Below are positions 55,576 through 63,655 of a DNA stretch of 64,000 nt, piece by piece. A program made the translations under genes and the position numbers. Source of the stretch: Oculina patagonica (lineage: Eukaryota); NCBI RefSeq assembly GCF_052425735.1, contig NC_135768.1, positions 9,424,001 to 9,488,000 on the forward strand, given 5' to 3'. The notes below the pieces were generated by a model that saw only the letters and a program-made list of their open reading frames with translations, made no database searches and had not been told where the DNA came from. The number at the start of each line of letters is the position of its first letter. Position 1 is the first letter of the stretch.

Positions 55576-58500
55576 AATCGATAAAACGACATTTTTAATT
55601 ATTATTATTTTTACCACAATTTTACGACACTTTTACCACAATAGTAAAACTCCGTTTTAATTGGCACTTAAACTCTGAATTAGTCAAAAGCTTTTGTAAC
55701 CGACCGCTTCTATCTTTGGGAAATACCAACTGGTCTTTTCTTTTTGATGTTTAGAGATTACCTGAAGATCAAATCCTAGCCATATTGAAATTCATGAATT
55801 TTGATTGGATTACAGGCCATGGTATATCAGTTTATATAAAGTCCATATACCATGAACTGCAAACATAGTAGATAGCCAACGAGGCGACGCGCCTCGTTAG
55901 CTATCTACAATTATATAATAACCTGAATTCTACGCGCATTTTGATTGGTTCTTACTTATGATCTATTAGAGTACAGACGCATAGATGACGTCACGCATTG
56001 GTGTGACTCGCGCTTGTGATCAGAGTTCATAGTCCAAATCAGAGTTGCCGGCAAAGTTTTTCAAACTCGCGGGGCCATAACAAAACGAAAAAGTTCAGCT
56101 TAATTACAAATCTTCAGTGAGAAATAATACGCCAAGCATCGTCCACCTTTCGAAGTATTTAACTGGGTTTGTTAGCTTGAAGAAGACAGTGAAATATTCG
56201 AGAAATTATCGAAATCTGTATGAAAGTGTTTGACCGATAGGCATAAATAGATTGTGCTCGGCAACTTTTGAGCAACTTTTAGCGTTTTGAGCAACTTTTT
56301 GTAGTACCAGCAACCTAGGGCAACTTTTGCCTTCCTTGGCAACTTTTGAGCAACAAATTGATATAAAACCGATCCAAACCATTAAAGGTCGTTTCATTTC
56401 GAAGGATTTTATTAAGACTGGTTTTATCAAAACCGTTTTTTTTTATTCTATTTTTTTAAATTTCTTTTAATTTTTTTATCAAAATACTTGTGAGCAGCAC
56501 ACAGCATAACAATGGCTTTTTTGCCTCTTTTAATGATTGTAAGAATATTTAATGAAAATGTTTAAATGGCAACAAACAAACAAACACGTTTTACGTATTT
56601 ATCTAAAACAAAACGACTCTAGAAAGCAAAAAACTTTTCTAAATTTTGGTGGCAACTTTTTGATATTTGAGCAACTTTAGAGCAACTTTTGGGTATATTG
56701 TGAAGCAACTTTTCCTGAATTAACTAGCACAATCTATTCATGCCTATTGACCGATGTTGTGCAGTTGGACGACTCCACGGGAAACGAATGAACGGCGGTT
56801 GAACGCTTTGGTTAATGCTTACAGATTTGAAAAACTTTCCAAATCGGAATAAAGCTTGTTCTACCCCTACTTTTTTAACTGCGCGCGCAGTTCATGTTCT
56901 GCACTTTCTCTTTTTATTAACTGCGCACAGCTGCAGTTCTTGTTCTACCCTTACTTTTTTGATGTCGGTAAAACGGCGACTCGGGGCCGGGGTCGGGTTC
57001 AATGTTTTTAAATATACTTTTTAGGGGTGTCGGTAAAACGCCGACTCGGGGCCGGGATCGGGGCAGGGGCCGGGGTCGAGGTCGGGGTCAATTTTTTTAA
57101 ATATTTTTTTTAGAATACACCGAATCAACGGAAAACCGGAAGTTGCATAGAAACGAGGCTAAGTGGCCCTTGGCAGCTAGAAATTATAAAGTTTATAAAA
57201 GTGCGTGGGGCATTTCAAGTCGGAAGAAAGCATTTCCTTCACAAATTCGCACAAATCTTGATCCTTATAAGTTCAAAAGTATAAGAAAAGAAATTCAGTT
57301 AAAAACAAGTGCAGTTTCACAATGGTAAATATCAGTACTTGCTCTTAGTCTTTTTCTCTGTCCTCCCGCCGCATCAAAAAGGGGGGTGGGGGCTGATTGC
57401 AGGTTTCCCCAAAAGTCGACCGAGTGTGCCTGCAACGATTTACTGACAAAACTGAAATGAAACCGATATATTCGTGCAATATTCGTGACCCGTAGCCGTT
57501 TTGCAGCAGGCCCAGGCTATCCCCGTCGTTTTTGGCCGACAGGAGACTATCGACCACGACGTTTACGCCCGGTAATTTACGAATCGGGCGTTTTGGCCCG
57601 CCCGATTAAAAAGGCGGAAATGAAATTTATCAGCTATCTCAGCCTTTTTGGGTTTGGCCTTCGCGGAAATCCGCTGTTTACGTTGTATCGCGAGTGTTGC
57701 GACCTGCAGAACATGAAGGCAAAACAGTGACAACTGGTTGCCTGATTATATGTCTAGATTACGACACAAACCACGCGCAGGGGGAAGGACTGGAGGGTGC
57801 TTCAACTCCCTACCCCCTACCCCTCCATTCTTTACAGTAAAACGAAAAAATATAGTACTAAGAAATAAACAAAGAAAGACACGGAAAGTTAAATATAGAA
57901 ACAAAACATCACTGAAAACGTTTTGCTCCTGAATTTCTTTCCACTAGCTACTGACGAAAGCCAGTGTGACAAAGCTGATTGGGTGGAGAGTCTTGACAGG
58001 GCTGGGTGGTCTAAGTGCCCACAGACGAACACTTACCTCAAGGGATTGTGGAGAAATGACCGAAAAGAGGGAGATGAACGAGTTGGACGTATCGAGTATG
58101 GAAGGTGCTGCCAAGCCTCGGAAGAAGCATTTGCTAACCAGCCTGCAGTATGTAATAATGCAAACTGGCGGATTACGTTAGACGGGTGAGCTTTTAAAAT
58201 AATAATAATCCCTACAACCTCCCTCCCGTGGGGAGAGGAACTCTAGTAAATTCAGGATAGGTGTCACCGTGCCTCAAACATTCGTTAACCCTGACCCTTT
58301 TTCAGGACAGAGAATCGAGACCCAAACTCTAACACTGAATTATACTCTTTGTTAAGAGAGACTGTTCGCAGTCTAGGATTATGTACATTTAAGAAACTGA
58401 CAAGACGAATACCCAATTTATACATCAGAATTAATGACGTCAAATGGTATTTTTTAACAGGGAGTTTCTGAGGGAAGAACCTGATTGATCCTTTGTACTG

Positions 58501-61500: not shown

Positions 61501-63655
61501 AATATATCGTTTTAACGATTGATAACTGGTTTCTTGAAGTGATGTAAACTAGTTACTGGAGGAGGGGGGTCATTATAAATTATGCACCTGAATGGGGGAG
61601 GGTCTCCCCAAAACTGGTAGGCCAAAATAAAAATGCACCAGCCCTCCCCCTTCTAATTTAGGACCGATCTCTTACCAAATAAAGAAAGATTGATCAGCTC
61701 TCTTCGTAAATTGGGGGCTCATCTCCCATCGATTAAAACAATATGGTTACTCATTAAGTTACTTTTCTTATTTCTTAACTGATTGGAGGTGCGATAGCCA
61801 GTAATGATTATTGCAGTAAATATAGCGAGTATAGTTCAAGCCCATTGCCTTGCTCTTCTCGAGAAGCCCGGGATATAAGCTCCAGGATGCTGGGCCACTT
61901 GGCTCGAACGCAAGACCTTAACTTAGTTAAAAGCAAATTCAACCACCAAAGTATAAAAAATTTATGTATAAATTTCTACTCTTTTTAGAGAGAAAAGTAC
62001 GTGAGCCTCAATCTGCGTTTTTTATAAGGGAAACTTGACCTGAATCGTTGTGTTTATGTTTTAGGTCACTACCGAGCGTTCGGACGAGTCATTCATCTGC
62101 AGTACCTGCAGGAAAGGTTAACGACACAAAACGGCTTGAACTTTGATGCTACAAGACAAACTATGGACCTTGTTGACCAAATGGATATTCTCGCAGATAC
62201 AGTTTACATTGAGGTACATTAATAACCCGAGGAGTACTTCGTATAGATGACTACAGGAGGGGGTTTTCACAATGGGCGCTTTCCATTGACCAAAAATTCC
62301 GGTTTGAATTTCCAGAAATTTCCAGTGGCGAATGGAACAGCATTTTCCGATTGACTGCACCGGAATGCAAAACGAAATTTACGTATGGAAATGCGTTTAA
62401 TATGGAAATTTTAACAGTACTGTTAAATGTACTGTTGCAGGTTTCTCTGACTGCAAAGATAACTCAATATTTTCGCAAATAAAAAAGCATTCCGAACAAT
62501 GATACACCACTATGACCGACATCGTGGTCATAACAACAGGGACCTTTCAAAAGCCACACCAGCAACGAAAACAAAAAGGTTTAATGCGCATTAATACAAT
62601 GGTTCTCCACGCGCGTTATAAATCTTTGTACGTTTCTTTGCCGCCGCCTGCAAAACAACATCGAAAATAACCGAGTAAATCTCGAGGGTTTTTTTTTCTA
62701 TTTGGAAACGAACGCTTTCTTAAGTGTCATGTAGCTGCTCTCAAGTGTCCAACTCGCTAGATCACTGGCCGAAGGAACTTTGGCTGAATAGAAAATGGCG
62801 GTTTTCCAAAATTTCCGGAAAAGAGACCATTCTCGCAAGGGGCGCTTTCCATTTACATAGAATTTTCGGTGAGAGCTCTTCGAAAAATGGAACAGTGCAA
62901 TTCTTTCCATCACGTAAACGGAACGGAAAGAAGCTGTTCCTTTTGAAAATTCCCGTTTTGATACAACTGCGAAGAGCCTGGTTCCAAAAAATGGCAATCG
63001 AAGGTCAAACTTTTCTACTTTATCTTCCTTCTCCCTGAAGCTTTGAAAAAGGTTGAAAGGAAAAACCCTTGCTCTTAGAGAAGAAACGTCTTCTATCTAC
63101 ACTCGACAGAAATATTGGATACATCTGAAGCGATTCAACGGGTAAATTTTAACGTTAACAGGTTGGTGACCTTTCTCTGCGAACGAACAGTCCGATTGTA
63201 GCAGATGGAACAGTAAATTTCCGGTCATACCGGGAAAACGGGAAAAGAGGAATAGTACCTCTGAAGGTATTCCTTTTTTTCACGAGGTCAAGAAATGTTT
63301 GATTTGTTTTTAACTCACAGACTTTGCTTAGGAGGTATACTTTCATTAATGTAATGCCATGGGTTCAATTCCCGTCGAGAACTCAGATTTTTTCTTTGTC
63401 CCACGCTCGTGAAAAATAAACATTTTGTCTTTATCACAAATGTTCACCTTTTCGTTTCTTTTGATTGATTGTTTTTGTAGGGCAACGTTCTTCTTCATGG
63501 AATCAGAAACGTGAAAATATACGCGCGCGAGATTATTGCTTCTCCAGGAAGTAGGATCGATTTCTCGGCACCAAATTGGAATCAGGTTTATCAACTACGA
63601 GTAGTTACCGGAAGTGATGGCGAAGATGGCAAGCATGGGACAAGTGGTCCGCAGG
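53768..63655 (+). CDS. Secreted protein (5' part): signal peptide - biomphalysin small-lobe-like Cys/Trp three-repeat domain - beta-rich/Gly-x-x region; continues beyond window end
   Basis: In-frame exons: signal-peptide exon 53768-53834 or its duplicate 55221-55287 (phase 1), 57948-58185, 58544-58842, 59734-59859 (GC donor), 62065-62213 and 63481-63655. The repeat C-x4-W-x2-(S/T)-(L/F)-D-x2-GW-x2-C-x(4-5)-Y-x2-G-(L/I)-x-(R/K)...IE-x3-CC occurs three times. Confidence 0.8.
56238..56746. mobile_element. hAT-type MITE
   Basis: TIR TAGGCAT.AATAGATTGTGCT / AGCACAATCTATT.ATGCCTA; 8-bp TSD TTGACCGA (56230-56237, 56747-56754); subterminal GCAACTTTT repeats. Confidence 0.92.
56961..57100. repeat. 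Duplicated transposon-end-like motif (TGTCGGTAAAACG..GACTCGGGGCCGGG)
   Basis: Two adjacent copies with CGGGGT/CGGGGC microrepeats. Confidence 0.55.
60679..61107. mobile_element. Kolobok-like MITE (TTAA target)
   Basis: TTAA-AGGAAACCTCCACTTCTACGACAAATTGA...TCAACTTGTCATAAAAGTGGCGTTTCCT-(T)TTAA. Confidence 0.7.
61190..61671. mobile_element. Harbinger-like MITE (degenerate)
   Basis: GGGACCGGTCATAACTTAGAGGGGG / CCCCTTCTAATTTAGGACCGATCTC with TTA on both sides. Confidence 0.7.
62275..63290. mobile_element. Harbinger-like MITE fragments (GGGCGCTTTCCATT ends)
   Basis: The same terminal motif occurs at ~62275 and ~62841, with shared ATGGAACAG internal motifs. Confidence 0.5.
63352..63420 (+). mobile_element. 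Short tRNA-derived SINE fragment
   Basis: B-box GGGTTCAATTCCC followed by ACTCAGATTTTTTCTTTGTCCCACGCTCGTGA. Confidence 0.55.

What the first reader, a model, noticed from the sequence alone, without database searches (positions are those of the whole stretch)
57948..63655. Biomphalysin-type recognition lobe fused to a non-aerolysin body: candidate new secreted effector or toxin architecture
Seen: after a signal peptide, three Cys/Trp repeats (CDKADWVESLDRAGWSKC...IEYGRCC; CNNANWRITLDGSNVWALCPGGYFLNGL...IEEGQCC; CYDEDVGTSFDNGGWSEC...IEKFKCC). From memory, this pattern matches the N-terminal small lobe of snail biomphalysin, an anti-parasite beta-pore-forming toxin whose lobe is followed by an aerolysin domain. 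Here it is followed instead by ...DILADTVYIEGNVLLHGIRNVKIYAREIIASPGSRIDFSAP...GSDGEDGKHGTSGPQG, i.e. short alternating beta strands leading into Gly-x-x repeats. Inference: a modular targeting domain shuffled onto a different, possibly beta-solenoid/Gly-rich toxin-like or lectin-like scaffold.
Basis: partly seen in the sequence, partly recalled or inferred. Interest (0 to 1): 0.72.

Follow-up and report, generated by a model that had tools for sequence, protein, structure and literature searches.

The report
Coral gene: snail-toxin lobe, new body
A coral (Oculina patagonica) gene has acquired, by exon shuffling, the same cysteine-rich beta-prism "recognition lobe" that snails carry on their aerolysin-type pore-forming toxins. 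Here the lobe sits on the front of an uncharacterised secreted protein with bacterial and giant-virus relatives, and nothing shows that this protein is a toxin.

Summary
Window 57948-63655 contains exons of one + strand gene, RefSeq LOC144629619 of Oculina patagonica. Six window exons join to give exactly residues 1-351 of its 526-aa product.

- **Lobe.** Two exons encode three homologous Cys/Trp repeats forming a 177-aa beta-prism (AlphaFold pLDDT 94-98). It aligns end to end with the N-terminal lobe of snail aerolysin-like toxins (physalysin E 7e-38; a Lymnaea protein 2e-44). No Pfam model covers it.
- **Spread.** The module is promiscuous. In cnidarians it is also fused to TSP1, EGF, Ig, adhesion-GPCR and WSC/aerolysin modules.
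- **Body.** It is not aerolysin. It is the N-terminal module of an unnamed family (about 1,000-1,100 aa in sea anemones and Porites): long beta strands alternating with six short Gly-x-x runs. It has no Pfam or PDB match, but has bacterial and giant-virus relatives.
- **Origin of the fusion.** A paralogue and a Desmophyllum relative lack the prism. The prism's internal intron matches that of coral prism-TSP1 genes, so this is old, apparently lineage-specific exon shuffling.
- **Corrections.** The signal peptide lies outside the finding (55221-55287). One exon was missed (59734-59859, GC donor). The gene runs more than 30 kb past the window.

Toxin function is unsupported.

The parts
55221..55287 (+). 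Exon 1: start codon and signal peptide (22 residues plus 1 base, ends in phase 1). It lies outside the finding's coordinates.
   Evidence: ATG...ACTCACG followed by gtaagc. Identical to residues 1-22 of the RefSeq product P0160. Similar to the signal exon of the paralogue LOC144630023.
57948..58185 (+). Exon 2: beta-prism repeat 1 and the first half of repeat 2. Starts in phase 1, ends in phase 2.
   Evidence: AG acceptor and GTGAGC donor. There is no ATG in frame upstream, so it cannot be a first coding exon. The intron position and phase at its 3' end are identical to those in the prism-TSP1 gene of the same genome.
58544..58842 (+). Exon 3: second half of repeat 2 and repeat 3 of the beta-prism. 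Ends in phase 1. Exons 2 and 3 together are 537 nt, a 1-1 phase cassette.
   Evidence: phmmer with this exon found 568 representatives at E<=1e-3. AlphaFold pLDDT is 94-98 over residues 30-200.
59734..59859 (+). Exon 4: first exon of the 'body' (phase 1-1, non-canonical GC donor).
   Evidence: Present in RefSeq P0160 and homologous to the N-termini of P0161, P0163 and P0164. Boundaries are ag / gcaaga.
62065..62213 (+). Exon 5: body; a helix followed by beta strands, ending in the DILADT..YIE motif.
   Evidence: Conserved in anthozoan and bacterial relatives.
63481..63655 (+). Exon 6: body; long beta strands and the first of six Gly-x-x runs. It is the last exon in the window, and the gene continues beyond base 64000.
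   Evidence: pLDDT is about 90 in the body model. Gly-x-x run at residues 337-351. Downstream exons are seen in locus L003.
53768..53834 (+). Second copy of the signal-peptide exon (ATG to a phase-1 gtaagc donor). It may be an alternative first exon or a relic; its use is unknown.
   Evidence: A 101-nt direct repeat, 53751-53851 against 55204-55304, at 92% identity. Translation shown. No prism or body exon lies between the two copies.

Best explanation
**What it is.** The region holds the 5' third of one Oculina patagonica gene (LOC144629619) for a secreted mosaic protein. The order is signal peptide, then a 177-aa disulfide-rich beta-prism made of three Cys/Trp repeats, then the N-terminal module of an unnamed protein family. 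That module consists of long beta strands alternating with six short Gly-x-x runs. A long helical region may follow.

[quoted passage not shown] In cnidarians the domain is a promiscuous extracellular module.

**How the fusion arose.** A segment of a prism-TSP1-type gene was copied at the DNA level into intron 1 of a body-family gene, and it is spliced in as an in-frame phase 1-1 cassette. This is exon shuffling.

**How it most likely works (inferred, not shown).** The prism acts as the binding or recognition head for a glycan or surface ligand, as proposed for biomphalysins and as is usual for beta-prism domains. It tethers the Gly-rich/beta module to that target. I read the protein as an extracellular recognition or adhesion-type protein and not as a pore-forming toxin. 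What the body does is unknown.
For: **Shown**
- The six window exons have AG acceptors, GT donors (one GC donor) and consistent phases. They join to give exactly residues 1-351 of RefSeq P0160.
- Exon 2 has no start codon of its own.
- The prism aligns essentially gaplessly to residues 19-185 of physalysin (E 6.6e-38), 20-188 of a Lymnaea protein (2e-44) and two further snail-type proteins. In each, Pfam Aerolysin follows.
- The AlphaFold model has 3 x 4 strands at pLDDT 94-98. This matches the published description of biomphalysin 1 domain I (PMC12186885).
- The same domain is fused to TSP1, EGF, Ig, GAIN/7tm_2 and WSC in other cnidarians.
- The body aligns at 41-59% identity with anthozoan proteins that start with a signal peptide and have no prism.
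- The Oculina paralogue and the Desmophyllum locus go from the signal exon, or from upstream DNA, straight to the exon-4 equivalent. No prism lies within 10 kb in Desmophyllum.
- The prism's internal intron has the same position and phase as in the prism-TSP1 gene.
- The closest prism found elsewhere (70-76% aa identity) is followed by TSP1 exons.
- The body model is confident, pLDDT 75-94. Gly falls every third residue in six conserved runs.

**Inferred**
- Secretion, from the signal peptide.
- A binding role for the prism, from the family contexts and the literature.
Against: - No transcript data were available here. The fusion rests on the RefSeq model, splice-site logic and phases, and the GenBank model of the same locus differs.
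- The architecture was seen in no other species among the searches.
- Because exons 2+3 form a 1-1 cassette, they could be skipped.
- No binding activity is known for any member of this prism family outside the snail toxins. Foldseek finds only weak beta-prism or lectin neighbours in the PDB, with E of 5e-3 or worse.
- The body's function is unknown, so a toxic function cannot be excluded.
Confidence: 0.72

Rival explanations
1. A new toxin architecture. The prism aims a membrane-active or otherwise harmful body at prey, predators or microbes, in parallel to biomphalysin, where the same prism aims an aerolysin pore.
For: - The prism is attached to pore-forming aerolysin or ETX/MTX2-like domains in snails, Nematostella and Clytia.
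- The protein is secreted.
- The body family has bacterial relatives, like many horizontally acquired eukaryotic toxins.
- The weak, non-significant structural neighbours include the secretion domains of two-partner-secretion haemolysins and adhesins.
Against: - There is no significant similarity of the body to any toxin family in Pfam, NCBIfam, PDB sequences or PDB folds.
- The bacterial homologue in Cohnella sits among housekeeping genes, not in a secretion or toxin locus.
- In corals most partners of the prism are adhesion or matrix modules.
Confidence: 0.15
2. The fusion is optional or an annotation artefact. The prism exons are an alternatively skipped cassette or belong to another transcript. 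The main product of the locus is then the ordinary prism-less body protein, as in the paralogue.
For: - Exons 2+3 and exon 4 are all phase 1-1, so exon 1 can join exon 4 in frame.
- Two gene models of the locus disagree. One uses a minisatellite as its first exon and skips exon 4.
- Annotation splits the locus into a 526-aa gene and a 743-aa gene that overlap in one exon and one reading frame.
- There are two copies of the signal exon.
- The fusion is not found in other species.
Against: - Exon 2 has a good acceptor but no start codon or signal peptide of its own. It can only be expressed downstream of the body-type signal exon.
- Exon 3 has a strong GTGAGT donor in the phase that exon 4 needs.
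- Both prism exons keep an intact frame and all family-invariant Cys, Trp and Gly residues, although their introns have diverged beyond alignment. That argues for selection on a translated product.
Confidence: 0.12

Closest known systems
Small lobe (domain I) of snail aerolysin-like pore-forming toxins: biomphalysins of Biomphalaria glabrata and physalysin of Physella acuta
   Same: - About 170 aa directly after the signal peptide.
- Three homologous repeats of roughly 55 aa, each forming a four-stranded sheet of a beta-prism.
- A shared Cys framework.
- 35-42% identity over an essentially gapless end-to-end alignment with physalysin and its Lymnaea and Physella relatives (PMC12186885).
   Different: - No aerolysin domain follows.
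- The coral domain has 14 Cys, against 12 in the snail lobes. The snails lack one Cys pair.
- The snail genes are reported to be intronless (PMC12186885), whereas here the domain is split by a phase-2 intron.
Coral prism-TSP1 proteins annotated 'thrombospondin-2-like' (Acropora millepora XP_044166631.1; Oculina KAL9952094.1)
   Same: - The closest relatives of this prism: E 1e-76 to 2e-78, 64% identity.
- The same internal intron position and phase.
- A still closer copy (70-76% identity) in another coral assembly is also followed by TSP1 exons.
   Different: - Their prism is followed by thrombospondin type-1 repeats.
- In the Oculina gene examined (locus L005), the prism shares its first exon with the gene's own signal peptide.
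Unnamed anthozoan family of about 1,000-1,100 aa (Actinia tenebrosa LOC116296688 and LOC116300761; Porites lobata, P. evermanni and P. harrisoni proteins), with bacterial relatives (a 1031-aa Cohnella zeiphila protein, a Ca. Accumulibacter fragment)
   Same: - Residues 201-526 of the product align at 41-59% identity with the N-terminal roughly 330 aa of the anthozoan members.
- The six Gly-x-x runs fall at equivalent places.
- A profile built from anthozoan members only finds the same module in bacterial proteins at 47-87 bits.
   Different: - All other members lack the prism.
- The annotated Oculina product stops before the helical region, although colinear helical-region exons lie downstream.
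Polyproline-II / polyglycine-II helix bundles (snow flea and springtail antifreeze proteins, PDB 3BOG and 7JJV; the gp38 receptor-binding domain of T-even-type phages, PDB 9V85)
   Same: - Short runs of 4-5 Gly-x-x triplets that are few in Pro, separated by other structure, and modelled with high confidence as non-helix, non-strand segments.
- These entries are the top PDB neighbours listed.
   Different: - The Foldseek E-values are 1 or worse, so this is a resemblance in kind and not a match.
- Here the runs alternate with long beta strands.
Jacalin-type and other beta-prism domains (artocarpin, griffithsin, ZG16, MABP domain, apicomplexan perforin-like APC-beta domain) and the PCSK9 C-terminal Cys-rich domain
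   Same: Three-fold pseudo-symmetric all-beta domains. They appear among the best PDB neighbours of the prism model.
   Different: - All matches are weak (best E 5e-3, PCSK9; lectins 0.4-1.2).
- There is no Pfam Jacalin hit.
- The disulfide framework is not shared.

Membership tests
Biomphalysin-type small lobe (beta-prism domain I of snail aerolysin-like toxins) | Significant sequence similarity over the whole lobe to the N-terminal lobe of snail aerolysin-like toxins | tested here: met
   phmmer with residues 24-200 of P0160: physalysin P0133 residues 19-185, E 6.6e-38; Lymnaea P0079 residues 20-188, E 2e-44; Physella P0115 and P0104. The alignment is essentially gapless. No hit carried the name biomphalysin. 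The link to that name is through physalysin (PMC8791074).
Biomphalysin-type small lobe (beta-prism domain I of snail aerolysin-like toxins) | Three consecutive four-strand motifs forming a pseudo-threefold beta-prism | tested here: met
   The AlphaFold model has 12 strands in three groups of four at pLDDT 94-98. The repeats are mutually homologous, probability 99.4-99.7%. The published description is in PMC12186885. This is a prediction, not a solved structure.
Biomphalysin-type small lobe (beta-prism domain I of snail aerolysin-like toxins) | Conserved cysteine framework (12 Cys, six disulfides in biomphalysin 1) | tested here: met
   Five Cys columns are invariant and two more are nearly so across 35 family members. 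The snail proteins lack one Cys pair that the corals have, giving 12 against 14. The disulfide pairing itself was not tested.
Aerolysin / ETX-MTX2 beta-pore-forming toxins | An aerolysin or ETX/MTX2 pore-forming domain after the lobe | tested here: not met
   Pfam scan of P0160 at E<=10 gave no family. The same scan finds PF01117 at E 1e-42 to 1e-78 in the snail and Nematostella proteins.
Unnamed anthozoan/bacterial family (Actinia LOC116296688-like) | An N-terminal module with the GHY..GR and DILADT..IYAR motifs and six conserved Gly-x-x runs | tested here: met
   Alignments A2 and A3 show 41-59% identity, with Gly columns nearly invariant at period 3.
Unnamed anthozoan/bacterial family (Actinia LOC116296688-like) | A long helical C-terminal region of about 600-700 aa | tested here: inconclusive
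   It is absent from the 526-aa RefSeq product. Colinear exons matching residues 358-1074 of a Porites member lie downstream on the same strand. The last shared exon can join the first of them in frame through GT/AG sites. Transcript evidence is lacking.
Collagen | Long uninterrupted Gly-X-Y tracts rich in Pro that form a triple helix | tested here: not met
   The runs are only 4-5 triplets long with 0-2 Pro each, and are separated by beta strands.
Polyproline-II / polyglycine-II bundle proteins | Structural match to a solved PPII bundle | tested here: inconclusive
   Snow flea and springtail antifreeze proteins and a gp38 domain are listed, but at E of 1.1 or worse. Model coordinates could not be inspected.
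Jacalin-like lectins | Sequence or significant fold match to the jacalin beta-prism I | tested here: inconclusive
   No Pfam hit. Foldseek E is 0.37-1.2 for artocarpin, griffithsin, ZG16 and frutalin.

The most novel reading that the evidence does not exclude
The same metazoan beta-prism module has been grafted independently onto two different bodies of bacterial type: the aerolysin pore in snails and some cnidarians, and, in Oculina, an uncharacterised beta/Gly-rich module shared with bacteria and giant viruses. If so, the prism is a general 'aiming head' that animals attach to horizontally acquired effector domains, and the Oculina protein would be a second, non-aerolysin example with a body whose fold is so far unsolved.
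Probability: 0.25. Interest if true: 0.7.

Novelty: new variant of a known kind. Interest (0 to 1): 0.5.

Why it matters
**For the biomphalysin field.** The small lobe has been treated as a peculiarity of the snail toxins, and its origin and function are still open. These results show it is one member of a large extracellular domain family that has no Pfam model. The family has 568 representatives at 50% clustering. It is spread over anthozoans, hydrozoans and gastropods and is combined with many partners. The lobe therefore probably joined the horizontally acquired aerolysin domain inside animals.

**For coral biology.** The locus is a clean, datable case of exon shuffling, with the donor family, the recipient paralogue and the shared intron all visible in one genome.

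**For structure.** The body is a confidently predicted module with no significant neighbour among solved structures, and it has relatives in bacteria and giant viruses. That makes it a reasonable target for structure determination.

None of this shows a harmful function.

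Tried and rejected
- **Pfam on single exons and on the full product:** nothing.
- **PDB sequence searches** with exon 3 and with the body profile: nothing credible.
- **NCBIfam and PHROGs:** only sub-threshold coiled-coil hits and one weak phage tail hit, E 3e-3.
- **A mixed alignment of prism and body families for a single AlphaFold job:** rejected, because MAFFT placed body relatives under the prism. 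Two separate jobs were run instead.
- **GenBank model KAL9958276 (P0002):** rejected as the gene structure. Its first exon is a 12-nt minisatellite and it skips exon 4.
- **Exact look-up of P0002:** not on record.
- **Collagen:** rejected.
- **A recent duplication from the prism-TSP1 gene:** rejected. Only the exons align at the DNA level (75-82%), and no TSP1 relic lies in the introns.
- **Prism exons upstream of the Desmophyllum relative:** none within 10 kb.
- **The search for related loci:** A two-sequence alignment found one Cohnella locus.
- **The hhalign E-value:** I do not rely on it. It is a pairwise, uncalibrated value at 12% identity. I use it only as a sign of colinearity.
- **DUF7932,** named on one giant-virus hit: not found in the literature and not hit in the Pfam copy used.

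Full report
**Source and gene**

The window is eukaryotic, about 39% G+C. A protein search identified it as Oculina patagonica, a stony coral. Two annotations of the locus came back:
- GenBank KAL9958276 (P0002, 430 aa);
- RefSeq LOC144629619 (P0160, 526 aa).

Six + strand exons in the window join to give exactly residues 1-351 of P0160:

| Exon | Coordinates | Content |
|---|---|---|
| E1 | 55221-55287 | start codon and signal peptide |
| E2 | 57948-58185 | prism, first part |
| E3 | 58544-58842 | prism, second part |
| E4 | 59734-59859 | first body exon |
| E5 | 62065-62213 | body |
| E6 | 63481-63655 | body |

All acceptors are AG. All donors are GT except that of E4, which is GC in a good GC-donor context.

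The GenBank model also starts in a 12-nt minisatellite (52770-53373). I reject it as the gene structure.

The finding's two ends are the exact start of E2 and the exact end of E6.

**The observation**

The quoted peptides are all present. The three Cys/Trp repeats are homologous to one another. Profile-profile comparison of the three segments gives probabilities of 99.4-99.7%.

The 'signal peptide' is not inside the finding. The frame upstream of 57948 has no ATG, and the signal exon lies 2.7 kb upstream.

**The lobe**

- *Size of the family.* phmmer with E3 alone against 1.84 billion cluster representatives found 568 proteins at E<=1e-3 and 43 at E<=1e-30. No Pfam model covers the domain.
- *Match to snail toxins.* The whole 177-aa domain aligns end to end with the N-terminus of four proteins: physalysin of Physella acuta (residues 19-185, E 6.6e-38), a Lymnaea stagnalis protein (20-188, 2e-44), a second Physella protein, and a metagenomic one. 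In each, Pfam Aerolysin begins about ten residues later. The alignment is essentially gapless, at 35-42% identity, with shared Cys, Trp and Gly columns. The snail lobes lack one Cys pair, giving 12 Cys against 14 here.
- *Predicted fold.* With a 35-sequence alignment, AlphaFold models residues 30-200 at pLDDT 94-98 as twelve strands in three groups of four. The published AlphaFold description of biomphalysin 1 domain I is the same: residues 1-173, three four-strand sheets, a pseudo-threefold beta-prism, six disulfides (PMC12186885).
- *Naming.* Physalysin is described as homologous to the biomphalysin family (PMC8791074). No hit carried the name biomphalysin, so the link to that name is indirect.
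- *Solved structures.* Against the PDB the model has only weak neighbours: the PCSK9 C-terminal domain at 5e-3, and MABP, APC-beta and jacalin-type lectins at 0.1-1.2.

**The lobe is not toxin-specific**

The same domain is found next to:
- TSP1 repeats (Oculina P0014; Acropora and Montipora 'thrombospondin-2-like');
- EGF repeats (Xenia, Porites);
- Ig domains (Stylophora);
- an adhesion GPCR with GAIN, GPS and 7tm_2 (Pocillopora);
- WSC plus aerolysin/ETX-like domains (Clytia).

It also occurs in tandem copies and alone. It is therefore a promiscuous extracellular module.

**The body**

- *Family.* Residues 201-526 of P0160 have no Pfam, NCBIfam or PDB-sequence match. They belong to a small unnamed family. 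Its members are an Oculina paralogue (LOC144630023), Desmophyllum, Actinia and Porites proteins, and two metagenomic ones. Full-length members are 1,007-1,124 aa.
- *Architecture of the relatives.* Those that include their N-terminus start with a signal peptide and go straight into the body.
- *Predicted structure.* With 13 sequences, AlphaFold models residues 210-520 at pLDDT 75-94. Long strands alternate with segments that are neither helix nor strand.
- *Gly-x-x runs.* Those segments are six runs of 4-5 Gly-x-x triplets. The total is 28 triplets, against 3.6 expected; none of 2000 shuffles reaches it. The Gly columns are nearly invariant at period 3, and the runs sit at equivalent places in relatives. 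The runs are too short and too poor in Pro for collagen. They resemble the polyproline-II or polyglycine-II helices of springtail antifreeze proteins and phage gp38. These are the top PDB neighbours listed, but at E of 1 or worse, so the fold has no significant solved neighbour.
- *Giant viruses.* Against predicted viral structures, a 1032-aa uncharacterised protein of a metagenomic mimivirus matches at E 1.2e-6.
- *Bacteria.* A profile built from anthozoan members only finds the same module in bacterial or bacterial-context proteins at 47-87 bits. These are a 1031-aa Cohnella zeiphila protein, a Ca. Accumulibacter protein, and a contig that also carries a BrnT/BrnA pair. The Cohnella gene lies among housekeeping genes and gives no functional hint.

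**How the fusion arose**

- E1 ends in phase 1, and the cassette E2+E3 is 537 nt with phases 1-1.
- In the paralogue, the homologous signal exon also ends in phase 1 and joins directly to the E4 equivalent.
- In Desmophyllum, no prism exon lies within 10 kb upstream of the E4 equivalent.
- The intron inside the prism has the same position and phase as in the Oculina prism-TSP1 gene.
- The closest prism found (70-76% aa identity, another coral assembly) is followed by TSP1 exons.
- Only the exons, not the introns, align at the DNA level, and no TSP1 relic remains.

I conclude that a DNA segment of a prism-TSP1-type gene was inserted long ago into intron 1 of a body-family gene. None of the other 149 listed prism proteins carries this body.

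**Beyond the window**

The public record of the same assembly (locus L003, no gaps) shows that the gene continues for more than 30 kb. Further Gly-rich exons follow. After them come exons colinear with the helical region of the Porites and Actinia proteins, up to residue 1074 of 1124.

The 526-aa RefSeq form ends in a tiny terminal exon. The same donor can instead join the first helical-region exon in frame through canonical sites. A second gene model starts at an internal Met of that shared exon, in the same frame.

No stop interrupts the homologous segments. The only two stops seen lie in an alignment overhang into an intron.

Whether a long form of roughly 1,250 aa is made needs transcript data. 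The assembly gap at 14471-14650 was left untouched.

**Function**

What is shown is the architecture, the homologies and the predicted folds. What is inferred is that the protein is secreted, that the prism is its binding head, and that the body is tethered by it.

I find no evidence for the toxin reading, but I cannot exclude it.

Noticed in passing
window 53751-53851 and 55204-55304: The signal-peptide exon and its surroundings are present twice, 1453 nt apart, at 92% identity over 101 nt. Both copies keep the ATG and the phase-1 gtaagc donor. The upstream copy may be an alternative first exon or a relic.
   Followed up: partly
window 52770-53373: A minisatellite of about 47 copies of a 12-nt unit (TGAGTTCCCTAG-like). 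It is open in several frames. The GenBank gene model uses it as a coding first exon (SEFPSEF... repeats), which looks spurious.
   Followed up: yes
window 59859/59860: Exon 4 uses a GC-AG intron (CAG|GCAAGA). The paralogue has a normal GT at the same place.
   Followed up: yes
L003:22445-36600 and L003:41869-52000 (same contig, beyond the window): There is a 14-kb intron inside the Gly-rich region. Annotation splits one colinear locus into two overlapping gene models (526 aa and 743 aa) that share an exon and a reading frame. The Desmophyllum relative is split in the same way (L008).
   Followed up: partly
window about 43358-46906, minus strand (L003:382-3930): The neighbouring upstream gene is a single 1182-aa open reading frame, rich in TPR repeats (NPHP3-type), according to the precomputed Pfam list for the locus.
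   Followed up: no
window 14471-14650: A run of 180 N (assembly gap or mask). It was left as it is.
   Followed up: no
P0177 / P0131 (proteins, not in the window): A prism-domain protein comes from a Tetraselmis (green alga) transcriptome in MMETSP, and several come from unnamed metagenomic eukaryotes. This is either a wider distribution of the domain or contamination.
   Followed up: no
L001:5573-9179 (Ca. Accumulibacter contig): The bacterial 392-aa relative of the body module overlaps by 8 nt the end of an 811-aa gene that has no Pfam match. The two may form one unit.
   Followed up: no
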